The notes: generated from the sequence alone by a model not told the origin. DNA of 64,000 nucleotides from Rebecca billardiae RCC1528 (GCA_965240325.2 OZ251232.1:1798001-1862000); one strand, 5' to 3'. Counted from the first letter of the stretch, positions 3,836-31,200 are shown. Program-made: numbers and translations.

Positions 3836-5789
3836 TATGACGACAACGCGCCGACCTCGAGCGCACGGTCGCGCGGGCCGAACAACACTTTGCAGCACTC
3901 TTCCAAGCCGCCTCACAGCCGGTCAACGCAGCCGGCGCGGCCCGGCACGACGTCGACTGCCGCCAGGCGAGCGGGGCTCCGAGGTGTCCTTGTCAAGTGC
4001 GGTGGTGACGCCCGCATGGTCCTTGCCCGATGGGCCGGCCGCGCCCGCCCGGGACGAGCGGGGCAGAACAGCCTAGTCTGTTGAGTTGATCGTTGGTGGA
4101 CACCGGTGATGGGGGTGCCTTGGGGCGCACCGACGGCGTAAAGGCGCTGCGGGCGCTGCGGTGCGCGCGACGGCGGCGCGCCCGGTGGCGCTGCTGTTGG
4201 AAGCTACTGCGCCCCTCTCCACCTCGCGCGCTTCGCTCGTCGTCGCCGTCTCCGCACCTGCTACCGGCATGCACGCGTGCGCAGCGCCTCGGACGCCCGT
4301 TGACGGCGCGCGCCCCGGCAACCGCCCATCACCGGCGGCGGCGAGTGCTGTTGCGCTTGGATGGAATCGGATGGTCTGCTGATAGTTGGACCAACCAACC
4401 AACGCCCTCGGTGGGCTTGGGCTTTGGTGTACGGAGCGTTCGGTGGAACTTGAGCCTCGGCACATTTCCCAGCGAAGTGGCCCACCTCGACGTGGCTGGC
4501 ACGCTCGTCACGCGCTCCCGAGCGCTCGTTTCGCGGTGCCGCAGGCCTTGGGCAGACCAGTCAGACATGGCGCGACCGCATTACCGGGCCATGTGCGCAC
4601 CACATCCGCGCTACGTGGCCTGCGCTCTGGACGACTGGGAGTCAATGCCCGGACCCACTGCATTCCACTGCCCCGCATGCACCCCGAGTCACCGTCAGAA
4701 GGCGTCGACGAGCGCAGAGCGCCCGAGCGGGTGCGCGGGAGTTCAACCAACTCGTGTACCTTCTTGCAAGCACCAGTGGCGAGGTCGCACGCCCAATCGT
4801 GACCAGCCGTGGAACTTGAGCCGGTCGGCAGCAAAACCACCGTGTGGCGGCCGAGATGAAGTAGCAGCGTGCAACTGCAAGGAGGAGGCGCGGTGCGTGT
4901 CCGCGGCTGGCGAGAGGCGTCCGGACCGTGATGTTCTCGGCCGCGTCCGCGCGCTTCCCGCCACCGCAGGCCCCGTGTACGCCCGTCGTCGCCCTCGCCG
5001 CGTGGGGCGTGGGCGCCCACCGAGCTCAAGTCCCATGGCAAGGAAGTACTGTACTGATCTACAGTTTACTATGATACAGTACGTAGTAAGATTTAACGTG
5101 CACACTTGGTTCAACAGTACGTAGTGATCTTGACAATGTGGCCGTGCACGCGGCAACAGGGCTCAGGCGGCCCAGTTGTCGAGTGCAGGCGTGTGTGGCT
5201 TGCGATGGCAGCCAGCCGTCAGCCGGGGCGCCACGCCCACGGTTCGCTGGTGGGCTGGCCCGATGGCGTCGCAGAGCTCACGCGTACGGGGGAGGAGGGC
5301 ATCGACGAGGAGACGACCAAGGGCGAGAAGCAGCCGGGGGCACGCAGCACGGGGCTCGGAGCATGCCGCCAGCACGCGTGCCTCCACACCGTCGCACGTC
5401 ACCCTTGCTCGTAGCTGTGCGCTGTGCTGCACTCATCTCACCATCGCCCATGCTACGGGCGCGGCCGGGTGGTGGACATCTACCTGTCGGCGCAGCACTG
5501 GCATCGGTGGTCGCCAGACACTTCTCGACTTGCTCTGCGCGTGACAGCAAGGAGACGGCAGCGCCACAGCTGTGTGAGCAGATGTCAGGTGCTGCTCTGC
5601 TCAGTGAGGCTGATAGACTGAGCACGCATGGCGGGCGCTGGCATTCCCCCGCATCCATGAGCCCAACAGGTGCATAGCCGTGCCCAGGAGCGCAGGACCA
5701 ACCGCCCGGTGCTGCTTCAAACACCTGCGCCCCACGCTGCAGGCAGGATGAGGGGCGCTCGACTCTACGCCGCACGCGGCGGCAGCAGC

Positions 5790-8230: not shown

Positions 8231-9039
8231 ACGCAAGCCCGGCGGCGCAGACCCGAGTCGTAGCCCGGCAGGTAGGCGGCACAGTAGTAGCGTAGTTTTC
8301 GTCACGGCATCGATCAGCATCGATCACGCGCATCATCACTGGCTACGACATCAGCGCATCCCGGCCTACACGGGACGGAGGCGGAGTGGCGTATATATAT
8401 ATATATCGCGTCGATCAGACTGACGCAGTCCGCGCGCAACTGAGCATCAGCAGGCAGTCCGACCGGGCCGTCTCCCGATCCGCGGCCACCGTTCGTCCGA
8501 CGAAGTCACATCACCACACCGTCACAGCGCAGATATATATATATATATCCGGAGCATACATATACGCAGTCGTGATGCCTGATGGCGCCACGGTTGTGCT
8601 GGCGGCTCACAGTCACACTCGATCAGTCGTCGCGTCCGGGTATAATAATAAGTGCGATGAAGCAGTACTTAGTATGAGTATAGTCTGCTGCGCTGATGGC
8701 TTAGCAGTCGTCGATCTGCTTATTACGACTACTGCTGTTCTTAGTCTTACGGGCGGACTATACGGCTCAATAAACTCAATGATGTAGCAGCGCGCAGTAG
8801 TCGACATCACTCATCAGAGTAATAAGCTCAGTGACTAAGCTGACGACGATGAGGCGACTACGTGACGCGCGCAGTACTAGATCCGCGCCGACCGTCAGCT
8901 TATAGGCGTCATATTATCATATCCGGGCACCGTGCTACACTCCGGCGCGACACGGTCAGCTGGTCAGCAGCTAGTAGAGTCGTAGTTTATAACGACCGGT
9001 CGTCGGCGTGCCAAGCAGTACTCAGCACCGCCCGACCAC

Positions 9040-11300
9040 CGCCGCCGGCCTGGCTGTGGCACCTCCCTGCTGCTACCACCGCATGCGGCGCGAAGCCTCC
9101 TGAGCGCAGCTACTGCCAGCTCGGCATCGAATGGCAGAGGCTCGAGCGCGCTACGGAACGAGGCGAGCGGCGACACCACGCTCGGTGCGTCCAGCGCCCA
9201 CGCCTCTCGGGTGGGCACTGCCAAGCTTTCAGCTGCTGCGGCCGCCCGCCGTGGCACCATCCCTGCTGCTGCCGCCGCACGCGGCGCGGAGTCGAGCGCT
9301 GCCGCTGCTGCCCAAGCTGGGCGCCGGCGCAGCAGCGTCGGATGGCAGCGGCTCCAGTGCCATGGGCAAGGCGAGCAGCGGCACCGCGTTCGGTGCGCCC
9401 ACCGCCCACGCCCCTCGGGCGTGCACCGCCGAGCTGACAGCTGCGTCGACAGCCGCCGCCCGCCATGGCACCATCCCTGCTGCTGCTGCCGCACGCGGCG
9501 CGGAGTCGAGCGCTGCTACTGCTGCCACGGCTGGGCGCGGGCGCAGCAGCACCGGATGGCAGCGGCTCCAGCGCCATGGGCGAGGCGAGCAGCGTCACCG
9601 CGTTCGGTGCCTCCAGCGCCCACGCCCCTCGGGCGTGCACCGCCGAGCTGACAGCTGCGTCGACAGCCGCCGCCCGCCATGGCACCATCCCTGCTGCTGC
9701 CGCCGCACGCGGCGCGGAGTCGAGCGCTGCCGCTGCTGCCCAAGCTGGGCGCCGGCGCAGCAGCGTCGGATGGCAGCGGCTCCAGTGCCATGGGCGAGGC
9801 GAGCAGCGTCACCGCGTTCGGTGCCTCCAGCGCCCACGCCCCTCGGGCGTGCACCGCCGAGCTCACAGCTGCGTCGACAGCCGCCGCCCGCCATGGCACC
9901 ATCCCTGCTGCTGCTGCCGCACGCGGCGCGGAGTCGAGCGCTGCTGCTGCTGCCACGGCTGGGCGCGGGCGCAGCAGCACCGGATGGCAGCGGCTCCAGC
10001 GCGATGGGCGAGGCGAGCAGCGTCACGGCGTTCGGTGCCTCCAGCGCCTACGCCCCTCGGGCGTGCACCGCCGAGCTTCCAGCTGCGTCGACCGCCGCCG
10101 CCCGCCGTGGCACCATCCCTGCTGCTGCCGCCGCACGCGGCGCGGAGTCGAGCGCTGCTGCTGCTGCCACGGCTGGGCGCGGGCGCAGTAGCACCGGATG
10201 GCAGCGGCTCCAGCGCCATGGGCGAGGAGAGCAGCGTCACCGCGTTCGGTGCCTCCAGCGCCCACGCCCCTCGGGCGTGCACCGCCGAGCTGACAGCTCC
10301 GTCGACCGCCGCCGCCCGCCATGGCACCATCCCTGCTGCTGCTGCCGCACGCGGCGCGGAGTTGAGCGCTGCCGCTGCTGCCACGGCTGGGCGCGGGCGC
10401 AGCAGCGTCGGATGGCAGCGGCTCCAGCGCCATGGGCGAGGCGAGCAGCGTCACGGCGCTCGGTGCGCCCAGCGCCCACGCCCCTCGGGCGTGCACCGCC
10501 GAGCTTCCAGCTGCGTCGACCGCCGCCGCCCGCCGTGGCACCATCCCTGCTGCTGCCGCCGCACGCGGCGCGGAGTTGAGCGCTGCCGCTGCTGCCCTGG
10601 CCGGGCGCGGGCGCAGCAGCGTCGGATGGCAGCGGCTCCAGCGCGATGGGCGAGGCGAGCAGCGTCACGGCGCTCGGTGCGCCCAGCGCCCACGCCCCTC
10701 GGGCGTGCACCGCCGAGCTTCCAGCTCCGTCGACCGCCGCCGCCCGCCGTGGCACCATCCCTGCTGCTGCTGCCGCACGCGGCGCGGAGTCGAGCGCTGC
10801 TGCTGCTGCCACGGCTGGGCGCGGGCGCAGCAGCACCGGATGGCAGCGGCTCCAGCGCGATGGGCGAGGCGAGCAGCGTCACGGCGCTCGGTGCGCCCAG
10901 CGCCCACGCCTCTCGGGCGTGCACCGCCGAGCTTCCAGCTGCGTTGACCGCCGCCGCCCGCCGTGGCACCATCCCTGCTTGTGCCGCCAATGCGGCGCGG
11001 AGTCGAGCGCTGCTGCAGCTGGGCCCCAGCTGGGCGCAGGCACAGCAGCACCAGATGGGAGCGGCTCCAGCGCGCTGGGCAGTGCCGTGGTCGCGTGGAG
11101 TGACGTCAACGCGCTCGACGCGTACGTCGCCGTGGCCCCTCGAGCGAGCGACACCGAGCTGTCATCTGCGGCGAACGCCGTCATCCGCAGCGGGACCATC
11201 CCAGCAGCTGCTGCCGCATGCGGAGCAGATTCGCCGAGCGTGGCTGCTGCTGGTGTTGGCCCGGATGGGCGCGGGCGCAGCATCATCAGTTGCCAGCGAC
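9040..11300 (-). repeat. Same 214-bp satellite in inverted orientation, ~9-10 units (right arm)
   Basis: Reverse-complement units; ORF starts 9465/9679 and 10432/10646 show period 214. Confidence 0.95.
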
Positions 11301-13965
11301 CCCATCGCGGTGGACGCGATGGGCTAGGTCGCTACTTTCGGCGCGCCATTGCCCAGGCCGTTCAAGCGAGCACCACCGAGCTGATAGCTGGAGCGACTGC
11401 CGCCGCCCGTCGTGGTACTGTACTGCTGCTTGCTGCTGCAGCATCAACAGCGCCGCTACTACTATTACCAGCAGCGCTGGGCGCGTGTATCCGAAGCAGC
11501 ACCGTACTGTATTGATGGCCCTGCCGTCTGAGTAGGGGAACATGCCAGTAGCTCGCATGCACCAGGATTGCAGTCCATGCCAGTACTGCCTCGCCGAGTA
11601 GAGTAGTAGGACCTCATCTGCTCACACAGCTGTGGCGCTGCCGTCTCCTTGCTGTCACGCGCAGAGCAAGTCGAGAAGTGTCTGGCGACCACCGATGCCA
11701 GTGCTGCGCCGACAGGTAGATGTCCACCACCCGGCCGCGCCCGTAGCATGGGCGATGGTGAGATGAGTGCAGCACAGCGCACAGCTACGAGCAAGGGTGA
11801 CGTGCGACGGTGTGGAGGCACGCGTGCTGGCGGCATGCTCCGAGCCCCGTGCTGCGTGCCCCCGGCTGCTTCTCGCCCTTGGTCGTCTCCTCGTCGATGC
11901 CCTCCTCCCCCGTACGCGTGAGCTCTGCGACGCCATCGGGCCAGCCCACCAGCGAACCGTGGGCGTGGCGCCCCGGCTGACGGCTGGCTGCCATCGCAAG
12001 CCACACACGCCTGCACTCGACAACTGGGCCGCCTGAGCCCTGTTGCCGCGTGCACGGCCACATTGTCAAGATCACTACGTACTGTTGAACCAAGTGTGCA
12101 CGTTAAATCTTACTACGTACTGTATCATAGTAAACTGTAGATCAGTACAGTACTTCCTTGCCATGGGACTTGAGCTCGGTGGGCGCCCACGCCCCACGCG
12201 GCGAGGGCGACGACGGGCGTACACGGGGCCTGCGGTGGCGGGAAGCGCGCGGACGCGGCCGAGAACATCACGGTCCGGACGCCTCTCGCCAGCCGCGGAC
12301 ACGCACCGCGCCTCCTCCTTGCAGTTGCACGCTGCTACTTCATCTCGGCCGCCACACGGTGGTTTTGCTGCCGACCGGCTCAAGTTCCACGGCTGGTCAC
12401 GATTGGGCGTGCGACCTCGCCACTGGTGCTTGCAAGAAGGTACACGAGTTGGTTGAACTCCCGCGCACCCGCTCTGCGCTCGTCGACGCCTTCTGACGGT
12501 GACTCGGGGTGCATGCGGGGCAGTGGAATGCAGTGGGTCCGGGCATTGACTCCCAGTCGTCCAGAGCGCAGGCCACGTAGCGCGGATGTGGTGCGCACAT
12601 GGCCCGGTAATGCGGTCGCGCCATGTCTGACTGGTCTGCCCAAGGCCTGCGGCACCGCGAAACGAGCGCTCGGGAGCGCGTGACGAGCGTGCCAGCCACG
12701 TCGAGGTGGGCCACTTCGCTGGGAAATGTGCCGAGGCTCAAGTTCCACCGAACGCTCCGTACACCAAAGCCCAAGCCCACCGAGGGCGTTGGTTGGTTGG
12801 TCCAACTATCAGCAGACCATCCGATTCCATCCAAGCGCAACAGCACTCGCCGCCGCCGGTGATGGGCGGTTGCCGGGGCGCGCGCCGTCAACGGGCGTCC
12901 GAGGCGCTGCGCACGCGTGCATGCCGGTAGCAGGTGCGGAGACGGCGACGACGAGCGAAGCGCGCGAGGTGGAGAGGGGCGCAGTAGCTTCCAACAGCAG
13001 CGCCACCGGGCGCGCCGCCGTCGCGCGCACCGCAGCGCCCGCAGCGCCTTTACGCCGTCGGTGCGCCCCAAGGCACCCCCATCAGCCATCACCGGTGTCC
13101 ACCAACGATCACTCAACAGACCAGGGCTCTGTCGAGAGGCCGCCAAGGTCCGACCGACTCAACAGAGCATTCTTCTGTCGAGTCCAGCTGGCCTCCAAGC
13201 TCAACTCAACAGAGCCTGGGCCCTGTTGTCGAGCCCACCCCCCCCCCTCGCCGATCGGCCAACTCAACAGAACATCCTTCTGTTGAGTTGGCCGAAAAGC
13301 GCCAAACCGGGTTGCAATGACAGCGATCGATCGATGAAAGGGATATCCGATCCGATACTGCACGTTGACGGTAAATGGATATCAGTGAACTGCAACTACT
13401 CATTCTATATTATTTGACGACACAGGTATCATAAGGCCTCTATACCCCCATGGTGGTATTCATACTGCGCTTCTTCGTGAGAGTTGCGTTGAAGATTTGA
13501 GGGTGTCAGATTTCGATCTCCGAAAAAATCTGATGACGATGTTCTTCTCGTCGACCTGAGAATAGTCTGCCTTCGCACCTGTACTCTTGATGAGGTCTGC
13601 TTTTCCATATGGCGGGCCGTTTATACTATCATAGTATCATACATTCTCAAGACAATTGTCAATCAACGAGATCATCAAACATGTACTCTCTTTTAATACT
13701 CTCGTCTCAATATGTACTCAGTCGTCGTTCCTGCGCGAATCATGATATTGACGTAGTACTTTTGAAGGCGCCACGGCGCGGGTTCGAAGCGCCATCTAGC
13801 CAACTGAAGGAATATAAAGGGGGGGCTACCGGCGCGTACTCAAGGTGGGTGCGCAGCCGCCCCGCCGCCGGGCCGGGACTTAAATTAATTTACATGGCCC
13901 GGCGTCGGGGCTGCCGAGCGCTTTGCAGTTCGCGATCGCCTGGCAAGCAGGCACGAGGAGGCGTG

Positions 13966-17198: not shown

Positions 17199-20100
17199 TC
17201 AAGCGGCAGACGATGATGCGCTGCTGATGATGAGCAGCAGCATCGTCGTGGCGTTGCCTGCTGTCTGTGACGAGCGGGCCATCGTCAGCTGTTCGGCAGC
17301 AGCGCAGCAGGCGGCGGCAGAGGCATCGACGCGGCTGCTGGCTAAGGTGTCCACTCCTTTGGGCTTGTCGTCCGGCGACTGCGGCTGTGGGCAATATCGC
17401 CGCCAATGCGCTGGGCTCGCCGCCGCGTCCTCGGAGAGCGGCTCGAGCACGCGCAGCTCGTGCGTGGCGTGCCCGTACCCGCCCGCGTGCGCCTCGACGG
17501 CCAACGCAAAGACGCCCGCCGTCACCACGCTCGACCGCTGCCCCGCGCGCGCGCGCTGTTGCCACCCCGCGCCGGCAGCGCCCGCGCCAAGCAGCGAGCC
17601 GATGCCCTCGCTCGAGCGCGCCTGCTGCAGGTCGCCCAGCAGGCCCGCGATGACGCGCACGCCGCACTGCGCCGCGTACTGCACCGCTCGAGCGTCGGCG
17701 GGCGCGTGCGTCAGCCTGTGCACCACGAGCACGTGCGGCTGGTGCGCGCTCAGCGCGGCGGTCAGCACGCTCGGCTGCGCGTCGAGCGAGGCTGGCCGCG
17801 CCACCCGCGCGCGGCCGATGCCGCCGTGCGCGTTGAGGCTGCTGCTGCCCGCGAGCTCGCCCACCGAGTCGATGACGAGCACGCGCTGCTCCGCCGACAG
17901 CTCGCGCGCCGCGTCTCGCAGCAGGTCGGCCGCCGCCGCGAGCGGCGCGCCGCGCGGTGAGAGCACGAGGATCGATGGCGCGTCCGCGCGGTGCAGCAGG
18001 TCATGGATCAAGCCGGCGCTGCCGCGCACGCAGTGGCCGGGGCGGATGGTGAGACCCAGGCACACGCTCGGGTCGTGCGGCGCGCGCAGCTGGCCCACGC
18101 AGTGCGGATAGCCGCCGCCGCCGCCGAGCGTGCCCGCGCCGGGCGCCGCGTGCGCAGGCGCGGCGCGCGCCACGCCGCCGCCGCTCGCTTCCAGCGCCGC
18201 GACGATGGCGGCGAGCTCGTCCGCCATCAGCGGCGGCTTCTCGTCGTGCGCGACGGGCGTGCTCGAGCCGAGCGCGCCCGCGTCGCCTGCGTCGGTCGAG
18301 ACGCGCTCGTCGTCCGCCCAGAAGCAGGGCGCCGTGCCCACGTCCAGCTCGACCAGGGTGACGACGCGCGGCGCGGCGCGCGCGCTGCCGCGCTGCCACC
18401 ACGGGCCGTCTCGCGCCGCGCGGACGCACGCCTGCTTGAGCTGCGCGCGCAGGAGAGGCGGCATGAGCTGCGCAAGCGCCGCCATGTCGGCTGGCCGATG
18501 CTCGAGCGCCGCATGCACCATCTCCGCAGGCCGAGTGCGCCGCAGCAGCTCGGGGCTGGCGAGCGCGCACGCGCGGCCCTTGTCAAAGCACGCGGGGCGC
18601 GCGCCCTGGTGCCGGATGCCCTCGGCCATGCGCTCGCCCGTGGCGGCGATCAGCGTGGCCAGGCGCTCGGCCGAGCCGTCGCGTTGCTCGCTCGCCATGC
18701 GCACGAGGCGCGTGCCACAGCGCAAGAGCTGCCGCGCGCGCTCCGTGCATCGCGCGACGACGCTGCTCGGGAGCGGGCGCGCGCCGGGCTGCCCGAGCCC
18801 GCCGGACGCCGCGCCGCCGGCCGCGGCGTGCGCCGTGGCCGGGCCGAAGGGCGAGAACGCCATCAGATGGTCGGCGTGGCGCGCTTGGTGCGGCGACGAG
18901 GGCGGCAGCTCGTCGCCCAGCAGCCGCGAGACCCCGTCGAGCGTCGGCGGCGCCTCGCCCAGCAGCAGCTCCGCCGCCAGCTGCACGTCGAGGGCGCGGC
19001 CGATGCACACGCCGCCGTGCGCCGAGAGCGCGTGCGCCTGCGAGTGCGCGCCGTGCATCAGCTTCACGTCGTGCGCGCCCACAAGCGCGGGCCACAGCTT
19101 CCTGAAGGCGTTCTCGGCGCCGAGCGTGAGCACGTCGACGATGTACGCGCCGTGCTGCGTCGCGAGCAGCACGAGCTCGACGGCGCTGCTCGTCGCGCTC
19201 AGCTCGAGCGCGAGCCAGCCGCCAGGCCCGGCGCCGCCCGAGCCGCCGGCCAGCAGCGGGTCGGCGGCAATGGCTGCCTCGAGCGCCTCGGCCGTGTCGA
19301 GGAGCCATGCGGGGTGTGCCGACTCGGCGTACGTCGCCGAACCCGCCGCGTGCCCGTCCGCCTCCACACCAAACGGTAGTGGCAGGGACGGCGGTGGCGG
19401 TGGGCGCGCCGCTGCTCCTGGCGGTCGCTCGGGTGCCACGGCCACGGGCGGTGCGGCCGGCTGCGGAGCGAGTGGCGGCGGCGGAGGCCGTGTCGCTCCG
19501 GCTTGCTGCGAAGGCTGCGGGGGCGACGGTGGCGGCGCCGGTGCTTGCGGCCCCGGCTGCAGCGTGGGCATTGGCTGCAGTGTCGGCTGCGGCGTCGGCT
19601 GCAGCGGCGGCTGTGGCTGCGACGTTGGCTGCAGCGGCGGCTGTGGCTGTGTCGGCGGCTGTGTCGGCGGCTGCGTCGGCGGCTGTGGCTGTGTCGGCGG
19701 CTGTGGCTGTGGCTGCGGCGTCGGCTGTGGCTGCGGCGTCGACTGCGGCTGCGATGCCAACAGGGGCCACAGCTGCGACCAGTCCTCCGGTAGCTGCGCT
19801 CCCTTCAGCCGAAGGCGCATCTCCCCGGGGTTGGGCGCCTGCGGGTCCGGCTCCACCACCCAGTCGGCCTGCGCGGCCGCCAGCTGCAGGATCGCCCTCA
19901 GCTTGCCCTTCGCCAGCGGCGCCATCTCGGGCCGTGAGCGGTCAGCCCGGTGCACCAGCGAGCGCACGTCCCACCCGGCAGGACCGTAGGTCTCCGGGAA
20001 GGTGCTCGCCAAGCGCTGCTGCAGCACGCGCATCGGGCAGGTGCCGCCGTGCGCGAGCAGGCACGTCGACACATCTGCGCTGAAGCGCGCCCCGGCGACT

Positions 20101-21272
20101 GGATCGAGGCGCAGTGACGCTGAGCTGCTCTGCGCAGGCCGAGGTGCCTCGGGCGCGAGCACGCCGGCGGGGGGAGCAGGTGGCGCGCTCCCACCGCCGC
20201 GCAGATCCGACCTCAGCTGCGCGGGCCCACCCACCTTGGCCCGGATCTCCGCCAAGTGCCATCTCAGCCTCGTCTTGCCCTCCTCGTCCACGCCCTCGTA
20301 CCGCGTGAAGCCGTGCCGGAGGAAGCCGTAGAGCAGCTCGCCCGGGCTCTTGTGCAGCGGCGGCGAGCAGCTCGAGCGGAGGCTGCGCAGCTCGGCACTC
20401 GCGTCCTCCTTTGTCGCCGGCCAGCACGACCGCGGCTGCAGGCCGAACACGCCCGCAAGGAGCCGGAGCGCGCGGAGCATATCGTCGTCGTCGACGCTGC
20501 CTGCTCGCGCGGGGACGAGCCGCGCGTGCGCCCCCCTACCGGAGCTGGAGCCGTCCTCGAGGACCTCGAAGCGATCGGGATGCGCGCGCAGAAGCTGCTT
20601 CAGCTTGGTCTGCAGAGGAGCCGCGGGGCGCACGCTCGCGCCGATCTCCCTCAGGTGTGGCGCCGGACGCCCGTCGCGCGCCTCGCTTGCGAGGAAGTCC
20701 TCGACGTCATTGAGGAACTTCGCCTCGACGGCCTCGTACGACTGTGCCAGCAGCACGCGAAGCGCGCGCCCGGACCCGAACGGGATCAGCTCGAAGCGGT
20801 CCGGGTACGAGAGGAGCAGCTGCTTCAGCTTGCAGCGCAGCGGACCCGAGGCGCGCACGTGCAAGCCGATCTCGCTGAGGAGCGGCGCTGGGCGCCCGTC
20901 CTCAAGTTCCTTCCAGACAAAGTTCTCGACGTCGTCCACAAACTGCTCCTCGACATCATCGACAAACGTCTGCGCGACAGCCGCAGCGGGAGTATCCTCC
21001 TGACAGCTGCTCTCGCTGCGGCTTTCGAGCATCGAGAGCAGCTCGTCAAGCTCCTTCGCTGCAGCTGTCGACTTCTCTGGCTTTGGCTTGTTCGATGCAC
21101 GAGTTGTCCGCGCGCGCTGCGGCGAGGTCGTCTCGGGAGGAGGCGGTGCCGCGGATGAGACGTCGTGTCGCCCAACGTGCTGCACTCGAAGGACCACCTG
21201 CACTCGCCCACCGGTGACCACGTTCAATCCGAGGAAGGTCATGACCCGAGCACCGTCATGGTCGTCGGCCAT
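17199..21272 (-). CDS. 1357-aa multidomain protein: LOTUS/OST-HTH-like repeats, Pro/Gln linker, degenerate DEDDy 3'-5' exonuclease (EXD1/Egalitarian-like), degenerate Ycf45/SpoIIIAA-type ATPase
   Basis: Uninterrupted ORF. Two repeats F.DDVE.F...L.EIG..VR...KLKQLL...PDRFE. Exonuclease-like motifs LALELS..VELVLLATQHGAYIVDV..VKLMHG..ALDVQLA..RPLP. Ycf45-like motifs LVELDVG, LGLTIRPGH, IHDLL..SILVL, RVLVIDSVGELAG, GIGRAR, HQPHVLVV. Confidence 0.8.
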   Translation of the reverse strand: MADDHDGARVMTFLGLNVVTGGRVQVVLRVQHVGRHDVSSAAPPPPETTSPQRARTTRASNKPKPEKSTAAAKELDELLSMLESRSESSCQEDTPAAAVAQTFVDDVEEQFVDDVENFVWKELEDGRPAPLLSEIGLHVRASGPLRCKLKQLLLSYPDRFELIPFGSGRALRVLLAQSYEAVEAKFLNDVEDFLASEARDGRPAPHLREIGASVRPAAPLQTKLKQLLRAHPDRFEVLEDGSSSGRGAHARLVPARAGSVDDDDMLRALRLLAGVFGLQPRSCWPATKEDASAELRSLRSSCSPPLHKSPGELLYGFLRHGFTRYEGVDEEGKTRLRWHLAEIRAKVGGPAQLRSDLRGGGSAPPAPPAGVLAPEAPRPAQSSSASLRLDPVAGARFSADVSTCLLAHGGTCPMRVLQQRLASTFPETYGPAGWDVRSLVHRADRSRPEMAPLAKGKLRAILQLAAAQADWVVEPDPQAPNPGEMRLRLKGAQLPEDWSQLWPLLASQPQSTPQPQPTPQPQPQPPTQPQPPTQPPTQPPTQPQPPLQPTSQPQPPLQPTPQPTLQPMPTLQPGPQAPAPPPSPPQPSQQAGATRPPPPPLAPQPAAPPVAVAPERPPGAAARPPPPPSLPLPFGVEADGHAAGSATYAESAHPAWLLDTAEALEAAIAADPLLAGGSGGAGPGGWLALELSATSSAVELVLLATQHGAYIVDVLTLGAENAFRKLWPALVGAHDVKLMHGAHSQAHALSAHGGVCIGRALDVQLAAELLLGEAPPTLDGVSRLLGDELPPSSPHQARHADHLMAFSPFGPATAHAAAGGAASGGLGQPGARPLPSSVVARCTERARQLLRCGTRLVRMASEQRDGSAERLATLIAATGERMAEGIRHQGARPACFDKGRACALASPELLRRTRPAEMVHAALEHRPADMAALAQLMPPLLRAQLKQACVRAARDGPWWQRGSARAAPRVVTLVELDVGTAPCFWADDERVSTDAGDAGALGSSTPVAHDEKPPLMADELAAIVAALEASGGGVARAAPAHAAPGAGTLGGGGGYPHCVGQLRAPHDPSVCLGLTIRPGHCVRGSAGLIHDLLHRADAPSILVLSPRGAPLAAAADLLRDAARELSAEQRVLVIDSVGELAGSSSLNAHGGIGRARVARPASLDAQPSVLTAALSAHQPHVLVVHRLTHAPADARAVQYAAQCGVRVIAGLLGDLQQARSSEGIGSLLGAGAAGAGWQQRARAGQRSSVVTAGVFALAVEAHAGGYGHATHELRVLEPLSEDAAASPAHWRRYCPQPQSPDDKPKGVDTLASSRVDASAAACCAAAEQLTMARSSQTAGNATTMLLLIISSASSSAA

Positions 21273-21452: not shown

Positions 21453-24400
21453 ATGCCGCGTGCGCAGGCCCTGCGAGCACCGCGCGTCGAGGCGGAGCTG
21501 ACCGTGTTTGACGGCGGGCGAGTGCATGTTTCGCTTTGCGTATTGGACGGTGGGCAGCGCAAAGTCGATCCTCATCCAAACCCGCGTGATGTGCCAGGGC
21601 AAGGTCCGCTCGAGCGCGCGGCATGCAGTACAGAGCGCGAGCGGTGTGCGACCAGTCCGTCCTCCTCGAGCTCTGATGCTTGCGTCAAGTCTGACGGCTC
21701 TGTTGACTCCACCATGTCCTTCGGCGCTGAGCTCGAGCTTGTCCGGGACATCGAGGGCTACATCGCAAAGGCGTGCCGTGGTCGGGGCCTCCCGCCTCTC
21801 CTGAGTGAGATGGAGGAGGACGTCTGCCCGCCGCCTCAGTACCACAAACCCCTTCTGCAGTTTCTGGAGCACTGGTCCACGCGGTTTGAGGTGTTCGAGA
21901 GCCTCAGCATCGTTGGTGTGGCGAAGCGCGTGCGGCTGATCAAAACGCAGGAGGAGACGGAGGAGGACGACGTGCTGCGCGCGCTCCGGCTGCTCGCGGA
22001 CCGTCACGGCCTGGAGGAGCCAGAGCGCTGGCCAACGACGAAGGAGCAGGCCAAGGCTCAGCTGCGCAGCGTTCAGCTTTGCTGCTCGCCGTAGCTCCTC
22101 CTGAAGCCGAGCCAGCTGCTCTACGGCTTCGTCACGCGCAAGCTGATCTGGTACGACGGGTATGACGATGGCGGCAACACGAGGATGCGGTGGCACCTGG
22201 GGAAGATCATGAGGATTCTTCGTTCCGACGACTCGGAGCGCTTTTCGAGCAGGCCTGAGCTACCGCCGGCTCCAACGGCTGACGCGCTCGCATCCGAAGC
22301 CTTTCCCTCTTTGCCCGCCAGCTCATCATCACGCCCCCTTCGCCTCGATCCGGAGGCCTCAGTTGCATTCAGCAGTGCTGTCAGCCTGTGCCTGCTCGCG
22401 CACGGCGGCACCTGCCCGCTGGGCGTGCTGCAGCAGCGCTTGGCGAGAACCTTCCCGGACACCTACGGTCCTGGGTGGGACATGCGCTTGCTGGTGCACC
22501 CGGCTGACCGCTCACGTCCCGAAGTGGCTCCAAAGAAGAAGGGCGTCTTCAGCACCATCGTGCGCGCAGCAGCTACGCAGGGCGGGTGGAAAAGCGAGTG
22601 GGTGGTCGAGCCCGACCCACGCCCGCCCAACCCCGGGGAGATGCGCCTCCGGCTCGCGCGAGCGCAGGCAACACGCCCACGTCCGCAGCTGCAGCTGCAA
22701 CCTGAGGCGGCGGCAGAGCCAGCGTCACTCACGCTGCCTTTGCAGCAAGGCGCGGGAGGCTCGGCAGCCATCGCGGCCACTTTCACCAAAGCCTGATCGA
22801 GCTGCGGTCGTGCTGCCACGAACGCTGTCGCCACCGCCACCGCCACGGGAAGCAGCGTTGCAGCCGCCGCCACCTCCGCCCATGCCACCGACGCATGCTT
22901 TGGGGGCAGCTACGAATGCGGCACACGCGGGCGCGCACGCCAAGCCGTGGCAGCCCGCATGGCTCCTGGACACGGCCGAGGCGCTCGAGGCAGCCATTGC
23001 CGCCGACCCGCTGCTGGCCGGCGGCTCGGGCGGCGCCGGGCCTGGCGGCTGGCTCGCGCTCGAGCTGAGCGCGACGAGCAGCGCCGTCGAGCTCGTGCTG
23101 CTCGCGACGCAGCACGGCGCGTACATCGTCGACGTGCTCACGCTCGGCGCCGAGAACGCCTTCAGGAAGCTGTGGCCCGCGCTCGTGGGCGCGCACGACG
23201 TGAAGCTGATGCACGGCGCGCACTCGCAGGCGCACGCGCTCTCGGCGCACGGCGGCGTGTGCATCGGCCGCGCCCTCGACGTGCAGCTGGCGGCGGAGCT
23301 GCTGCTGGGCGAGGCGCCGCCGACGCTCGACGGGGTCTCGCGGCTGCTGGGCGACGAGCTGCCGCCCTCGTCGCCGCACCAAGCGCGCCACGCCGACCAT
23401 CTGATGGCGTTCTCGCCCTTCGGCCCGGCCACGGCGCACGCCGCGGCCGGCGGCGCGGCGTCCGGCGGGCTCGGGCAGCCCGGCGCGCGCCCGCTCCCGA
23501 GCAGCGTCGTCGCGCGATGCACGGAGCGCGCGCGGCAGCTCTTGCGCTGTGGCACGCGCCTCGTGCGCATGGCGAGCGAGCAACGCGACGGCTCGGCCGA
23601 GCGCCTGGCCACGCTGATCGCCGCCACGGGCGAGCGCATGGCCGAGGGCATCCGGCACCAGGGCGCGCGCCCCGCGTGCTTTGACAAGGGCCGCGCGTGC
23701 GCGCTCGCCAGCCCCGAGCTGCTGCGGCGCACTCGGCCTGCGGAGATGGTGCATGCGGCGCTCGAGCATCGGCCCGTCGACATGGCGGCGCTTGCGCAGC
23801 TCATGCCGCCTCTCCTGCGCGCGCAGCTCAAGCAGGCGTGCGTCCGCGCGGCGCGAGACGGCCCGTGGTGGCAGCGCGGCAGCGCGCGCGCCGCGCCGCG
23901 CGTCGTCACCCTGGTCGAGCTGGACGTGGGCACGGCGCCCTGCTTCTGGGCGGACGACGAGCGCGTCTCGACCGACGCAGGCGACGCGGGCACGCTCGGC
24001 TCGAGCACGCCCGTCGCGCACGACGAGAAGCCGCCGCTGATGGCGGACGAGCTCGCCGCCATCGTCGCGGCGCTGGAAGCGAGCGGCGGCGGCGTGGCGC
24101 GCGCCGCGCCTGCGCACGCGGCGCCCGGCGCGGGCACGCTCGGCGGCGGCGGCGGCTATCCGCACTGCGTGGGCCAGCTGCGCGCGCCGCACGACCCGAG
24201 CGTGTGCCTGGGTCTCACCATCCGCCCCGGCCACTGCGTGCGCGGCAGCGCCGGCTTGATCCATGACCTGCTGCACCGCGCGGACGCGCCATCGATCCTC
24301 GTGCTCTCACCGCGCGGCGCGCCGCTCGCGGCGGCGGCCGACCTGCTGCGAGACGCGGCGCGCGAGCTGTCGGCGGAGCAGCGCGTGCTCGTCATCGACT

Positions 24401-25143
24401 CGGTGGGCGAGCTCGCGGGCAGCAGCAGCCTCAACGCGCACGGCGGCATCGGCCGCGCGCGGGTGGCGCGGCCAGCCTCGCTCGACGCGCAGCCGAGCGT
24501 GCTGACGGCCGCGCTGAGCGCGCACCAGCCGCACGTGCTCGTGGTGCACAGGCTGACGCACGCGCCCGCCGACGCTCGAGCGGTGCAGTACGCGGCGCAG
24601 TGCGGCGTGCGCGTGATCGCGGGCCTGCTGGGTGACCTGCAGCAGGCGCGCTCGAGCGAGGGCATCGGCTCACTGCTTGCCGCGGGCGCTGCCGGCGCGG
24701 GGTGGCAACAGCGCGCGCCCGCGGGGCAGCGGTCGAGCGCGGTGATGGCAGGCGTCTTTGCGTTGGCCGTCGAGGCGCACGCGGGCGGGTACGGGCACGC
24801 CACGCACGAGCTGCGCGTGCTCGAGCCGCTCTCCGAGGGTTCTGCGGACGCGGCGGCGAGCCCAGCGCATTGGCGGCGATATTGCTGCCGGCCACACTCG
24901 ACGATGAGCGGTGACTACGGGGAGTACGACACCGCCATCATCAGCAGCAGCCGCCGCCCTGCGAATAACGACTACGACGACGACGGTGATGACGACGACG
25001 ACGAATCCCCGCGCACCGCCGCCGCCTCGTCTGCTTTTGCTGATGCGATGATGGCGGTGGAGCACACGAGCCACACGACCGCCACGGGGATGACGCTACG
25101 GCAGACACTCACAATGTTGCTGGGGCGCGATGAGCGCATATGA
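21453..25143 (+). pseudogene. Inverted paralogue of the 1357-aa gene, with an in-frame TAG (22092-22094) and a frameshift near 22700-22800; the C-terminal exonuclease+ATPase part stays open
   Basis: ORFs 21414..22094 and 22185..22796 share a frame and align through the stop (CSP*LLLKPSQLLYGF vs CSPPLHKSPGELLYGF). The remainder is in frame 22363..25143. 22954-24885 is nearly identical to the reverse complement of 17391-19313. Confidence 0.75.
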
Positions 25144-28200: not shown

Positions 28201-31200
28201 GCGTCGCGCGCCGGTGAGCATGCGGGCAGCATGCTGCTGTTGAGCGGCGAGGGAGCGAGCGCGCCTTTGCGCCGCGCGCGGGCGAGCGGCGTCGAGCAGC
28301 GGCGCGCGCAGAGCGTGCAGAGAGCACGGGCGCGCCGAGTGCGAGCGGCGAAGCCACCGTGCTGCGGAGCGACGGCGGCGGAGCGAGCAGACGAGGCAGG
28401 AGCCGAACGGCGCAGCCACCGTGCTGCGGGGCGACGGCAGCGGGGCGGGCTGACGGGGCAGGAGCGGGCCGCGCGTCGATGAAGCGCGCCGGCAGCGCGC
28501 TGCTGTTGAGCTGCGTGGCCGCGAGCTCGCTCCTTCGCGGGCGAGCGGCGGCGAGCGGCGGCGAGCGTAGAGCGTGTAGCGAGCACGGGCGCGCCCAGCG
28601 CGAGCGGCGCAGCCACCGTGCCGCGAAACGATGGCGGCGGAGCGCGCCGACGAGGCAGGGGCGCGCCGCACCTCGATGAGCGTGCGCGCGGCACGCTGCT
28701 GTCGAGCGGCGCGGGCGCGAGCTCGCTCCTGCGCGGGCGAGCGGCAGCGAGCGGCGGCGTGCGGCGGCGAGCGTAGAGTGTGTAGCGCACGCAACGCGCC
28801 GACTGCGAGCGGCGCAGCCACCGTGCCGCGAGGCAACGGCGACGGAGCGAGCCGACGAGGCGTGTGCGCGCCGCGCGTCGATGAGCGCGCGGGCAGCCGG
28901 CTGCTGCCGAGCGGCGCGGACGCGAGCTCGCGCCCGCGCAGGCGAGAGGCGGCAAGCGGCGGCGAGCGTAGACCGTGTAGCGAACGCAAATGCGCCGACT
29001 GCAAGCAGCGAAGCTTCGTGCCGCGAGGCGACGGCGACGGAGCGAGCCGGCAAGGCATGTGCTCGCAGCGCGTCGATGAGCGCGCGGGCAGCAGGCTGCT
29101 GTCGAGCGGCGCGGGCGCGAGCTCGCTCCTGCGCGGGCGAGCGGCAGCGAGCGGCGGCGTGCGGCGGCGAGCGTAGAGCGTGTATTGGTAGCGAACGCGA
29201 CGCGCCGAGCGCGAACGGCGCAGACACCGTGCCGCGAGGCGACGGCGTCGGAGCGAGCTGACGAGGCATGTGCGCGCCGCGCGTCGATGAGCGCGCGGGC
29301 AGCAGGCTGCTGTCGAGCGGCGCGGGCGCGAGCTCGCGCCTGCGCGGGCAAGCGGCGGCGAGCGGCGACGAGCGTATAGCGTGTAGCGAACGCAATGCGC
29401 CGACTGCGAGCAGCGCAGTCACCGTGCCGCGAGGCGACGGCGGCGGAGCGAGCCGACAAGGCATGTGCGCGCCGCGCGTCGATGAGCGCGCGGGCAGCAG
29501 GCTGCTGTCGAGCGGCGCGGGCGCGAGCTCGCGCCTGCGCGGGCAAGCGGCGGCGAGCGGCGACGAGCGTAGAGCGTGTAGCGAACGCAATGCGCCGACT
29601 GCGAGCGGCGCAGCCACCGTGCCGCGAGGCGACGGCGGCGGAGCGAGCCGACGAGGCATGTGCGCGCCGCGCGTCGATGAGCGCGCGGGCAGCAGGCTGC
29701 TGTCGAGCGGCGCGGGCGCGAGCTCGCGCTTGCGCGGGCGAGCCGCGGCGGGCAGCGGCGAGCGCAGAGCGTGTAGCGAACGCAATGCGCCGACTGCGAG
29801 CGGCGCAGCCACCGTGCCGCGAGGCGACGGCGGCGGAGCGAGCCGACGAGGCATGTGCGCGCCGCGCGTCGATGAGAGCGCGGGCAGCAGGCTGCTGTCG
29901 AGCGGCGCGGGCGCGAGCTCGCGCTTGCGCGGGCGAGCCGCGGCGGGCAGCGGCGAGCGCAGAGCGTGTAGCGAACGCAATGCGCCGACTGCGAGCGGCG
30001 CAGCCACCGTGCCGCGAGGCGACGGCGGCGGAGCGAGCCGACGAGGCATGCGTGCGCCGCGTGTCGCTGAGCGCGCGGGCAGCAGGTTGCTGTCGAGCGG
30101 CGCGGACGCGAGCTCGCTCCTGCGCGGGCGAGCGGCGGCGAGCGGCGGCGTGCGGCGGCGAGCGTAGACCGTGTGGCGAACGCAATGCGCCGACTGCGAT
30201 CAGCGCAGCTTCGTGCCGCGAGGCGACGGCAGCGGAGCGAGCCGACGAGGCATGCGTGCGCCGCGCGTCGCTGAGCGCGCGGGCAGCAGGCTGCTGTCGA
30301 GCGGCGCGGGCGCGAGCTCGCGCCTGCGCGGGCGAGCGGCAGCGAGCGCCGGCGTGCGGCGGCGAGCGTAGACCGTGTGGCGAACGCAATGCGCCGACTG
30401 CGATCAGCGCAGCTTCGTGCCGCGAGGCGACGGCAGCGGAGCGAGCCGACGAGGCATGCGTGCGCCGCGCGTCGCTGAGCGCGCGGGCAGCAGGCTGCTG
30501 TCGAGCGGCGCGGGCGCGAGCTCGCGCCTGCGCGGGCGAGCGGCGGCGTGCGGCGGCGAGCGCAGAGCGTGTAGCGAACGCAATGCGCCGACTGCGAGCG
30601 GCGCAGCCACCGTGCCGCGAGGCGACGGCGGCGGAGCGAGCCGACGAGGCATGTGTGCGCCGCGCGTCGATGAGAGCGCGGGCAGCAGGCTGCTGTCGAG
30701 CGGCGCGGGCGCGAGCTCGCGCTTGCGCGGGCGAGCGGCGGCGGGCAGCGGCGAGCGCAGAGCGTGTAGCGAACGCAATGCGCCGACTGCGAGCGGCGCA
30801 GCCACCGTGCCGCAAGGCGACGGCGGCGGAGCGAGCCGACGAGGCATGCGTGCGCCGCGCGTCGCTGAGCGCGCGGGCAGCAGGTTGCTGTCGAGCGGCG
30901 CGGACGCGAGCTCGCTCCTGCGCGGGCGAGCGGCAGCGAGCGGCGGCGTGCGGCGGCGAGCGTAGACCGTGTGGCGAACGTAATGCGCCGACTGCGAGCA
31001 GCGCAGCTTCGTGCCGCGAGGCGACGGCGGCGGAGCGAGCCGACGAGGCATGTGCGCGCAGCGCGTCGATGAGCGCGCGGGCAGCAGGCTGCTGTCGAGC
31101 GGCGCGGGCGCGAGCTCGCTCCTGCGCGGGCGAGCGGCAGCGAGCGGCGGCGTGCGGCGGCGAGCGTAGAGCGTGTACTGGTAGCGAACGCGACGCGCCG

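What the first reader, a model, noticed from the sequence alone, without database searches (positions are those of the whole stretch)
17199..21272. Double pseudo-enzyme: LOTUS-like repeats + dead DEDD exonuclease + dead Ycf45-type ATPase in one protein
Seen: an intact 1357-aa ORF whose two enzyme folds have both lost catalytic motifs. Exonuclease: ExoI DxE reads LALELS, the ExoII region HD..xD reads HGAHSQ, and ExoIII YAAxD reads RCTER. ATPase: Walker A GxPGVGKTT reads SPRGAPLAAAA and Walker B VIVIDEI reads VLVVHRL, while flanking Ycf45 motifs (GLTIRPG, RVLVIDSVGELAG, GIGRAR) persist. Knowledge: winged-helix/LOTUS-like domains with a DEDD-fold domain occur in Egalitarian, and EXD1 and LOTUS proteins act in RNA localisation and piRNA-type silencing. 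Inference: this may be a non-catalytic RNA-binding scaffold or decoy of an undescribed algal RNA-granule/silencing system. It sits between two large mobile elements.
Basis: partly seen in the sequence, partly recalled or inferred. Interest (0 to 1): 0.75.

Follow-up and report, generated by a model that had tools for sequence, protein, structure and literature searches.

The report
Doubly dead Egalitarian-like exonuclease–ATPase protein
This algal gene encodes a real 1357-residue protein in which both an RNase D-type exonuclease domain and a Ycf45-type ATPase domain have lost their catalytic residues; it belongs to a widespread but apparently undescribed eukaryotic family whose front half resembles the fly mRNA-localisation factor Egalitarian.

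Summary
The minus-strand ORF at 17199-21272 is coding (GC3 0.87).

**Domains**
- Two confirmed winged-helix repeats.
- A further conserved domain.
- A P/Q-rich linker.
- An RNase D/Egalitarian-type exonuclease fold (Z 21.5 and 19.2).
- A PilT/Ycf45-type ATPase (Z 16.6; E 3e-12 to the alga's own plastid Ycf45).

**Catalytic motifs.** All five DEDDy residues are replaced. So are Walker A, Walker B and the sensor His.

**Family.** A search of 1.84 billion proteins shows the exonuclease plus Ycf45-ATPase fusion is widespread: 93 of the 150 best cluster representatives carry it. They come from diatoms, cryptophytes, Rhodelphis, oomycetes, euglenids and a choanoflagellate. Some members carry true LOTUS domains. 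Dead exonuclease sites are common in the family. Dead ATPase sites are rare, and this protein is the most extreme case.

**Selection.** Four copies lie on the contig, and their differences show purifying selection (omega about 0.3).

**Best reading.** It is most likely a non-catalytic nucleic-acid-binding adaptor.

**Not supported**
- LOTUS membership of the repeats; only the winged-helix fold is shown.
- The third repeat.
- Any piRNA or RNA-granule link.

I found no paper describing the fusion.

The parts
17199..21272 (-). Intact 1357-codon ORF (copy A), the only full-length copy of four on this contig
   Evidence: (GC3 0.87)
20745..20954 (-). Winged-helix repeat 1 (aa 107-176)
   Evidence: A profile built without this protein hits it at E 1.7e-9. 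The AF2 topology is H-b-H-H-b-b, with pLDDT 60-77.
20508..20729 (-). Winged-helix repeat 2 (aa 182-255)
   Evidence: The leave-out profile gives E 3.8e-12 and pLDDT is 70-84. VIA Z is 8.4-8.6 to winged helices, including the TDRD5 LOTUS domain 3s93. Pfam OST-HTH reaches only E 0.029.
20199..20489 (-). Conserved 'domain X' (aa 262-358, MLRALRLL..WPxTKE..LLYGF..RxxWHL), fold unresolved
   Evidence: It aligns with P0001, P0064 and P0005 and with copies B, C and D. dN/dS between copies A and B is 0.33. The AF2 model is below pLDDT 50 here.
19878..20090 (-). Proposed third repeat (aa 395-465); not confirmed
   Evidence: The leave-out profile gives E 0.08. Copy D keeps a homologous stretch.
19353..19760 (-). 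Pro/Gln-rich low-complexity linker (aa 505-640). The boundary of the near-identical duplication (19338-19550) lies in it.
18606..19331 (-). RNase D/Egalitarian-type DEDD exonuclease-homology domain, catalytically dead (aa 648-889)
   Evidence: VIA Z values: 21.5 to T. brucei RNase D, 19.2 to the Egl ExoHD, 18.7 to Rrp6. Foldseek gives E 1e-7. The intact homologue P0005 hits it at E 7e-8.
19197..19217 (-). ExoI remnant WLALELS (D->E, E->S)
19026..19064 (-). ExoII remnant KLMHGAHSQAHAL (HD->HG, D->Q)
18723..18761 (-). ExoIII remnant VVARCTERARQLL (Y->R, D->R)
18408..18605 (-). Conserved exonuclease-adjacent segment (CFDxxxxxxLASxELLxxxRP)
   Evidence: Family consensus. The Egl and RNase D structural alignments run to model residues 276-282.
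17373..18395 (-). Ycf45/SpoIIIAA-type (PilT-like) ATPase module, catalytically dead (aa 960-1300)
   Evidence: E 3.3e-12 to the alga's own plastid ycf45, with the alignment in A1. VIA Z is 16.6 to PilT4 and 16.1 to DotB. Pfam Spore_III_AA scores 22.4 bits, below the cut-off of 27.
17916..17972 (-). Walker A remnant ILVLSPRGAPLAAAADLLR
17706..17735 (-). Walker B remnant HVLVVHRLTH (DE->HR)
21714..25143 (+). Head-to-head paralogue (copy D). Its C-terminal half (22930-24885) is 98.4% identical to 17391-19338. Its N-terminal half is 48% identical, with an in-frame TAG near 22093 and a frame change before the exonuclease part.

Best explanation
The gene encodes a non-catalytic 'pseudo-enzyme' paralogue of a widespread eukaryotic protein family. 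The family is built as nucleic-acid-binding winged-helix or LOTUS domains, then an RNase D/Egalitarian-type exonuclease-homology domain, then a Ycf45/SpoIIIAA-type (PilT-like) ATPase.

In this copy the folds are kept. Every catalytic residue of the exonuclease is replaced, and so are the phosphate-binding loop, the Walker B acids and the sensor histidine of the ATPase. It can therefore neither trim nucleic acid nor hydrolyse ATP in the canonical way.

It most likely acts as a nucleic-acid (probably RNA) binding adaptor. The winged helices and the exonuclease-like surface would hold the ligand, as in Egalitarian. The dead ATPase domain would serve as an assembly or docking module, possibly joining or competing with the catalytically competent paralogue encoded on contig 3.

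**Shown:** domain identities, motif losses, family context, the multi-copy state and signs of purifying selection.
**Inferred:** RNA binding, scaffolding, and hetero-oligomerisation with the live paralogue.
For: **It is a real gene.**
- The ORF is 1357 codons with GC3 0.87.

**The ATPase is homologous and its motifs are lost.**
- E 3.3e-12 to the plastid-encoded Ycf45 of the same genome.
- Column-by-column alignment shows Walker A, Walker B and the sensor motif lost. The paralogue on contig 3 keeps GPPGSGKTT, VIDEV and SAHGD.

**The family is real and widespread.**
- A profile search of 1.84 billion proteins gave 4662 hits.
- 93 of the top 150 carry the exonuclease-like domain in front of the ATPase.
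- Pfam calls DNA_pol_A_exo1 (up to 68.8 bits) plus Spore_III_AA in those homologues. OST-HTH reaches 85.6 bits in P0014 and 49.6 in P0040. WH_Egal scores 26.8 bits in P0022.

**The folds are kept.**
- AF2 model of aa 640-1300: pLDDT 82, pTM 0.81.
- Z 21.5 to T. brucei RNase D, 19.2 to the Egalitarian ExoHD, 16.6 to PilT4.
- The family profile's best solved relative is Egalitarian, E 2.9e-25.

**A non-catalytic precedent exists.**
- In Egl the LOTUS-like domains plus the ExoHD bind RNA. The putative catalytic residues are dispensable and lie about 15 A from the RNA (PMC13186709).

**Motif census.**
- Of 96 proteins (93 outside proteins plus this protein and its two paralogues), 22 are fully intact and about 65 have a non-canonical exonuclease site with an intact ATPase.
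- The ATPase is degenerate only in this protein, its contig-30 paralogue and four outside proteins (P0002, P0067, P0077, P0123). Three further fragments cut off before Walker B cannot be scored.

**There are signs of selection.**
- Among the four copies, the dead half has 12 synonymous and 11 non-synonymous variable sites. The neutral expectation is 72% non-synonymous (binomial p 0.011).
- Domain X between copies A and B gives dN/dS 0.33 (Fisher p 0.0017).
Against: - No expression or binding data could be obtained.
- This protein has the longest terminal branch in the ATPase tree (2.22 against a median of 0.3).
- It keeps only 65 of 130 family-conserved positions. That also fits relaxed constraint.
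- The selection tests rest on 23 and 46 substitutions. They could be distorted by gene conversion and by the strong GC3 bias.
- The confident AF2 model is driven partly by the family alignment, so it may overstate how well this sequence still folds.
- Three of the four copies are truncated or disrupted.
- No close orthologue turned up. The best outside score is 338 bits at about 25-30% identity.
Confidence: 0.6

Rival explanations
1. The gene is a decaying or neutral relic. It would be a family member that lost its function, was copied by recent segmental duplication in a repeat-rich region, and is on its way to becoming a pseudogene. The open frame would then be a leftover.
For: - It has the longest branch of 148 ATPase domains.
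- Half of the family-conserved positions are lost.
- Copies B and C are 5'-truncated, and copy D has an in-frame stop and a frame change.
- The flanks are foldback and satellite DNA.
- There is no close orthologue in 1.84 billion proteins.
Against: - The ORF has no stop in 1357 codons. From base composition alone, at about 74% GC, about 0.015 stops per codon would be expected (my calculation).
- GC3 is 0.87 along the whole frame.
- Differences among the copies are biased towards synonymous changes (p 0.011 and 0.0017).
- Losses cluster in the nucleotide-binding motifs, while structural Gly, Leu, Pro and Arg positions persist.
- The AF2 model is confident.
Confidence: 0.25
2. The protein keeps a non-canonical activity. 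It might bind nucleotide without hydrolysing it and act as a switch. Or it might cleave with a re-invented active site, as has been proposed for Maelstrom's exonuclease-like domain.
For: - The first ExoI acid is conservatively replaced (D->E).
- Several conserved polar residues near the exonuclease pocket persist (D713, K737, H740, D762, Q764, E768).
- An 'active site switch' in a DnaQ-H-like domain is cited for Maelstrom in the reference list of PMC2848206.
Against: - Four of the five DEDDy positions are non-acidic (S, Q, R, R).
- The P-loop has no Gly, Lys or Thr/Ser and carries a 3-residue insertion. Walker B is HR.
- The Asp-box tail GDGD reads GSSS, and the sensor His is Leu.
Confidence: 0.1
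3. This is the first reader's specific reading: the protein is a component of an algal piRNA-like silencing or RNA-granule system.
For: The only support is by analogy. LOTUS and dead-exonuclease proteins (TDRD5/7, Oskar, EXD1, Maelstrom) act in animal germ granules. EXD1 is a structural match at Z 16.8.
Against: - The repeats are not demonstrable LOTUS domains.
- The nearest relatives by sequence and fold are Egalitarian and RNase D, not EXD1.
- I did not annotate the neighbouring genes. The only neighbours I examined are the paralogue and repeat DNA.
Confidence: 0.05

Closest known systems
Egalitarian (Drosophila Egl; PDB 9rvy and 9uju; PMC13186709)
   Same: - N-terminal winged-helix (LOTUS-like) domains are followed by a 3'-5' exonuclease-homology domain with an adjacent helical segment.
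- In Egl, catalysis by the exonuclease domain is dispensable and the module binds RNA.
- It is the best solved relative of the family profile (E 2.9e-25). The structural match is Z 19.2, rmsd 2.8 over 208 residues.
   Different: - Egl has no Ycf45-type ATPase. It has BicD- and dynein-light-chain-binding parts instead.
- Egl still has the putative catalytic residues, whereas here all five are replaced.
- This protein's winged helices are a different sequence type (WH_Egal was not hit).
- I did not test RNA binding or motor coupling here.
Ycf45 / SpoIIIAA-type ATPases (Pfam PF19568; plastid-encoded ycf45; PilT/VirB11-like secretion-ATPase fold)
   Same: - The C-terminal 340 residues are homologous to the alga's own plastid Ycf45 (E 3.3e-12, 32% identity).
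- They fold like PilT4 and DotB (Z about 16).
- The flanking motifs GLTxRxG, VxxxD and GxAR persist.
   Different: - Walker A, Walker B, the Asp-box tail and the sensor His are lost.
- The domain is fused behind an exonuclease-like domain.
- The gene is nuclear, not plastid.
- The Pfam score (22.4 bits) is below the gathering cut-off of 27.
RNase D / Rrp6 / WRN-type DEDDy exonucleases (Pfam PF01612)
   Same: Same fold: Z 21.5 to T. brucei RNase D, 19.0 to E. coli RNase D and 18.7 to RRP6. Intact family members pass the Pfam threshold.
   Different: D, E, D, Y, D read E, S, Q, R, R. The Pfam score of this protein is 13.2 bits against a cut-off of 23.6.
Catalytically dead exonuclease-fold RNA-pathway proteins (EXD1; Maelstrom)
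   Same: These also carry a DEDD-type fold without canonical catalysis, used as a binding or adaptor module. EXD1 matches at Z 16.8.
   Different: They have a different domain context, with no ATPase and no winged-helix repeats. They rank lower than Egl and RNase D by both sequence and fold.
Intact family members, e.g. P0014 (3 LOTUS + DEDDy + ATPase), P0005, and Seminavis robusta CAB9496493.1, annotated 'AAA'
   Same: Same overall order of domains. They align over the whole exonuclease-linker-ATPase region (profile positions 7-620).
   Different: They keep the DEDDy and/or Walker motifs. Some have true OST-HTH domains where this protein has a family-specific winged helix. Identity to this protein is only 23-30%.

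Membership tests
DEDD 3'-5' exonuclease superfamily, RNase D-type (PF01612) | DnaQ-like exonuclease fold | tested here: met
   AF2 model pLDDT 82. Z 21.5, rmsd 3.0 over 224 residues to T. brucei RNase D. Foldseek E 1e-7.
DEDD 3'-5' exonuclease superfamily, RNase D-type (PF01612) | Sequence match above Pfam's gathering score | tested here: not met
   13.2 bits against a cut-off of 23.6, E 0.077. Homology holds only transitively: E 7e-8 to P0005, whose domain scores 60.3 bits.
DEDD 3'-5' exonuclease superfamily, RNase D-type (PF01612) | Catalytic D-E-D-(Y/H)-D residues in ExoI, ExoII and ExoIII | tested here: not met
   They read E, S, Q, R, R.
Ycf45 / SpoIIIAA-type ATPase (PF19568) | Homology to Ycf45 and a PilT-like two-domain fold | tested here: met
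   E 3.3e-12 to the own plastid Ycf45. Z 16.6 to PilT4 over 282 residues. Pfam gives 22.4 bits, below the cut-off of 27.
Ycf45 / SpoIIIAA-type ATPase (PF19568) | Walker A GxxGxGK[TS], Walker B hhhhDE, sensor His | tested here: not met
   They read SPRGAPLAAAA, VVHRL and GLLGD.
OST-HTH / LOTUS domain (PF12872) | Winged-helix fold (a1-b1-a2-a3-b2-b3) | tested here: met
   Repeats 1 and 2 have this topology. Z is 8.4 to the TDRD5 LOTUS domain 3s93 and 7.8 to the Oskar LOTUS domain. These tie with MarR, Z-alpha and other winged helices.
OST-HTH / LOTUS domain (PF12872) | Sequence-profile membership | tested here: not met
   Pfam gives 14.7 bits against 23.8, covering only profile positions 47-67. 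hhalign of this winged-helix type against the family's true LOTUS domains gives probability 0.3%. The ESM Atlas scores of 0.80-0.82 are leads only.
Egalitarian-like architecture | Winged-helix domains followed by an exonuclease-homology domain related to Egl's | tested here: met
   Egl is the best PDB hit of the family profile (E 2.9e-25). Z is 19.2 to Egl residues 522-758. The Egl architecture is described in PMC13186709.
Egalitarian-like architecture | dsRNA stem-loop binding; BicD and dynein light-chain binding | not testable with these tools
   This needs biochemistry. I did not look for a BicD-binding region.
Pseudo-enzyme (retained non-catalytic homologue) | Kept by selection despite loss of catalysis | tested here: inconclusive
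   Omega is about 0.3, with p 0.011 and 0.0017 on 23 and 46 changes. But the branch is very long and there are no expression data.

The most novel reading that the evidence does not exclude
The RNA-recognition module known from animal Egalitarian (LOTUS-like winged helices plus a non-catalytic exonuclease-homology domain) may be only the front half of an ancient, pan-eukaryotic machine. In that machine the module was coupled to a hexameric PilT/Ycf45-type ATPase. Animals would have kept the front half as Egl. This alga would show the same route to a pure adaptor in progress, in three steps: a live-ATPase paralogue (contig 3), a half-dead one (contig 30) and a fully dead one (this gene). The dead form could work as a regulator or cap of the live ring.
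Probability: 0.3. Interest if true: 0.75.

Novelty: new variant of a known kind. Interest (0 to 1): 0.55.

Why it matters
If the reading is right, three things follow.

1. **An unnamed family.** A large eukaryotic protein family sits unnamed in databases, labelled 'AAA', 'SpoIIIAA' or hypothetical. It joins winged-helix or LOTUS domains, an RNase D-type exonuclease and a Ycf45-type ATPase. The family could give a first functional handle on Ycf45, an ATPase of unknown role that is conserved in plastids and cyanobacteria. It points towards RNA or nucleic-acid end processing.

2. **A link to Egalitarian.** The family's nearest solved relative is Egalitarian, which suggests an evolutionary origin for a well-studied animal mRNA-localisation factor.

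3. **A natural series.** This genome holds a live ATPase paralogue, a half-dead one and a fully dead one. That series can be used to ask what the folds do once catalysis is gone.

The double-dead protein by itself is a modest curiosity. The family context is the more valuable result.

Tried and rejected
- **Word-index search, C-terminal half.** It returned nothing. Ala/Gly/Pro-rich words probably swamped the candidate list, so this blank is not evidence of absence. The exhaustive HMMER search then found 4662 relatives.
- **Word-index search, contig-3 paralogue.** It also returned nothing. Its words came from the first 500 residues of the query, which largely miss the ATPase.
- **phmmer of the whole protein against PDB sequences.** Only low-complexity noise came back.
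- **NCBIfam.** No hit.
- **Three-paralogue exonuclease profile against PDB.** Egalitarian reached only E 0.21. It became significant only with the 56-member family profile.
- **Repeat profile against PDB.** No LOTUS entry appeared.
- **Iterative profile of the repeats.** It converged on a family-specific winged helix and never reached the true OST-HTH or WH_Egal domains of other members.
- **hhalign between the two domain types.** Probability 0.3%, so I rejected 'LOTUS member'.
- **Third repeat.** Rejected as unproven.
- **AF2 of aa 96-360.** Confidence was low (pLDDT 59.6). Domain X stayed unresolved, and Foldseek gave no hit at E <= 0.001.
- **Literature searches for the fusion.** No paper describing it was found.
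- **Unused search.** I left the third word-index search unused and did not identify the species. My own evidence shows only an alga with a 95-kb plastid contig that encodes ycf45.

Full report
**1. The observation**

The minus-strand ORF at 17199-21272 exists and encodes 1357 residues. GC content by codon position is 0.77/0.57/0.87, and the bias holds from about codon 100 to 1300. This is the signature of real coding sequence in this very GC-rich genome.

- OST-HTH, E 0.029.
- DNA_pol_A_exo1, E 0.077.
- Spore_III_AA, E 7e-5.

NCBIfam and a single-sequence search of PDB sequences gave nothing useful.

**2. Genomic setting**

The window is contig 15 of a 72-Mb, 41-contig assembly. The exonuclease-plus-ATPase half of the gene occurs four times on this contig at 97-99% identity.

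| Copy | Location | State |
|---|---|---|
| A | this gene | full length, 1357 aa |
| B, C | 23 and 50 kb upstream of copy A | 892 and 895 aa; they start inside 'domain X' and lack the winged helices |
| D | 21714-25143, plus strand, head-to-head with A | N-terminal half 48% identical to A, with an in-frame TAG near 22093 and a frame change before the exonuclease part |

The near-identity begins inside the Pro/Gln-rich linker, at 19338-19550. The C-terminal halves were therefore either recently homogenised or recently copied onto older, diverged N-terminal halves.

The flanks are a foldback with 214-bp satellites (4107-13084) and a 195-bp satellite (28.6-33.5 kb).

More distant paralogues in the same genome:
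- Contig 30: a 1156-residue ORF with three winged helices, an exonuclease-like domain and an ATPase.
- Contig 3: a 762-residue ORF with an exonuclease-like domain and an ATPase.
- Contig 20: a Ycf45-like stretch that I did not examine.
- Contig 41: the canonical plastid-encoded ycf45, on a 95-kb plastid contig.

**3. The ATPase domain**

The C-terminal domain matches the alga's own plastid Ycf45 at E 3.3e-12. The alignment shows where each motif falls:

| Motif | Plastid Ycf45 | Contig 3 | Contig 30 | This protein |
|---|---|---|---|---|
| Walker A | GKPGVGKTT | GPPGSGKTT | GAAGAGRSS | SPRGAPLAAAA (3-residue insertion) |
| Walker B | IIIDEI | LVIDEV | IVVDEL | LVVHRL |
| Sensor | TAHGN | SAHGD | GALGT | GLLGD |

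The genome thus holds a graded series: live, half-dead and dead.

**4. The family**

I built a profile from the three paralogues and searched every one of 1.84 billion cluster representatives. It found 4662 relatives. Many proteins of 600-1800 residues match across the whole exonuclease-linker-ATPase region, and 93 of the top 150 carry the exonuclease-like domain.

In these homologues Pfam finds:
- DNA_pol_A_exo1 up to 68.8 bits, together with Spore_III_AA.
- Bona fide OST-HTH/LOTUS in some: P0014 has three such domains (85.6 bits) and P0040 scores 49.6 bits.
- WH_Egal at 26.8 bits in P0022.
- An NPM1 C-terminal domain in P0004.

Named sources are the diatom Seminavis robusta, Rhodomonas salina, Rhodelphis marinus, the oomycete Aphanomyces stellatus, Euglena gracilis, the choanoflagellate Bicosta minor, MMETSP transcripts and many metagenomes. 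Their database names are 'AAA', 'SpoIIIAA' or hypothetical. A 2009 paper had already noted nuclear YCF45 homologues in plastid-lacking protists (PMC3087521). I found no paper describing the fusion.

**5. Motif census**

The census covers 96 proteins with both domains: 93 outside proteins plus this protein and its two paralogues.
- 22 keep all DEDDy and Walker residues.
- About 65 have a non-canonical exonuclease site with an intact ATPase. Some of these are alignment gaps rather than true losses.
- A degenerate ATPase occurs only in this protein, the contig-30 paralogue, P0002, P0067, P0077 and P0123.
- Three further fragments (P0064, P0093, P0108) are cut off before Walker B and cannot be scored.

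So a dead exonuclease domain is the common state of this family. A dead ATPase is the rare one, and this protein is the most extreme case.

Other measures agree:
- It keeps 65 of 130 positions that are at least 80% conserved in outside homologues. The median outsider keeps 122.
- It has the longest terminal branch of 148 ATPase domains, 2.22 against a median of 0.3.
- It shares the derived 'HG' in ExoII with the contig-30 paralogue and P0067. The exonuclease site therefore probably died before these lineages split, and the ATPase decayed later.

**6. Structure**

AlphaFold2 on aa 640-1300 with a 56-row alignment gave pLDDT 82 and pTM 0.81.

| Match | Score |
|---|---|
| T. brucei RNase D | Z 21.5; Foldseek E about 1e-7 |
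| Egalitarian ExoHD | Z 19.2 |
| E. coli RNase D | Z 19.0 |
| Rrp6 | Z 18.7; Foldseek E about 1e-6 |
| EXD1 | Z 16.8 |
| PilT4 | Z 16.6 |
| DotB | Z 16.1; Foldseek E 7e-8 |
| Archaeal RuvB-like helicase | Foldseek E 2e-9 |

The 56-member family profile, searched against PDB sequences, ranks Egalitarian first (E 2.9e-25). T. brucei RNase D follows (2.5e-22), then Rrp6 (3e-15) and EXD1 (1e-13).

The 2026 Egl structure paper describes three LOTUS-like winged helices, then an exonuclease-homology domain with an adjacent helical domain. These bind RNA stem-loops, with the putative catalytic residues dispensable and about 15 A from the RNA (PMC13186709). That is the closest mechanistic precedent.

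**7. The N-terminal part**

AlphaFold2 on aa 96-360 was of low overall confidence (pLDDT 59.6). Repeats 1 and 2 reach 60-84 and have winged-helix topology.

All the structural matches are winged helices. Z of 8-8.6 ties MarR, Z-alpha, TDRD5 LOTUS (8.4), Oskar LOTUS (7.8) and the Egl domains (8.0).

Sequence tests:
- A profile built only from outside proteins recognises repeat 1 (E 3e-8) and repeat 2 (E 4e-11), but not the proposed third repeat (E 0.07).
- The same winged-helix type heads P0001, P0006, P0032, P0037, P0051, P0062, P0064 and P0071, and occurs three times in the contig-30 paralogue.
- hhalign against the family's true LOTUS domains gives probability 0.3%.

The repeats are therefore LOTUS-like in fold and in position, but they are not demonstrable OST-HTH members. 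Domain X (aa 262-358) is conserved in several family members, and its fold remains unresolved.

**8. Selection**

Across 628 aligned codons of the dead half, the four copies differ at 12 synonymous and 11 non-synonymous sites. The neutral expectation is 72% non-synonymous (binomial p 0.011).

Domain X between copies A and B gives dN/dS 0.33 (Fisher p 0.0017).

This argues for continued constraint. The counts are small, however, and gene conversion and GC3 bias are confounders.

**9. Verdict**

The best explanation (0.6) is a retained, non-catalytic nucleic-acid-binding adaptor derived from an Egalitarian-like exonuclease plus Ycf45-ATPase family. It may act with or against the live paralogue.

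The main rival (0.25) is a relic in decay within a repeat-rich segmental duplication.

Earlier notes from this scan:
- Another note describes the A/D palindrome (s1-365616).

Noticed in passing
window 21714-25143 (+): Copy D is a head-to-head paralogue. It has one winged helix, domain X and a remnant of aa 395-515. It also has an in-frame TAG near 22093 and a frame change before the exonuclease part. Yet its C-terminal half is 98.4% identical to copy A. It looks like a pseudogene, or an intron-bearing gene, whose 3' half was homogenised by gene conversion.
   Followed up: partly
L012:3777-6455 (-) and L013:3946-6633 (-) (contig 15, 23 and 50 kb upstream of copy A): These are two further copies, of 892 and 895 residues. 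They start inside domain X (MTKESAKAQLRSLRS...) and lack the winged helices. Copy B shares at least 1.7 kb of 3' flank with copy A at 99% identity.
   Followed up: partly
L009:4694-8164 (+) (contig 30): This paralogue is a 1156-residue ORF. It has three winged helices, a dead exonuclease site and a half-degenerate ATPase (Walker A GAAGAGRSS, Walker B DE intact, sensor His->Leu). Its nearest outside relative is the metagenomic P0067 (clade support 97).
   Followed up: partly
L010:4326-6614 (+) (contig 3): This paralogue has an exonuclease-like domain without catalytic residues but a fully intact Ycf45-type ATPase (GPPGSGKTT, VIDEV, SAHGD). It is the likely catalytically active partner or ancestor type in this genome.
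   Followed up: partly
L017 (contig 20, 1162800-1163360, -): This is another Ycf45-like ATPase stretch (41% identity to P0005 residues 787-981, open frame 532 aa). I did not examine it.
   Followed up: no
L011:5809-6918 (-) (contig 41, 95 kb): This is the plastid contig. It carries a canonical 369-residue ycf45 next to rpl2, which shows that the organism has a red-lineage-type plastid genome.
   Followed up: no
window 4107-13084 and 28600-33550: One flank is a large foldback palindrome with mirrored arrays of a 214-bp satellite. The other is a long array of a 195-bp satellite. Together they flank the gene pair. I did not test whether they are mobile elements.
   Followed up: partly
P0004 (Bicosta minor), P0025: Family members carry other N-terminal modules: a nucleophosmin C-terminal domain in P0004 and a Nup98 GLEBS motif in P0025. 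This suggests the ATPase-exonuclease core is coupled to varied nucleic-acid or nuclear-pore-related adaptors.
   Followed up: no
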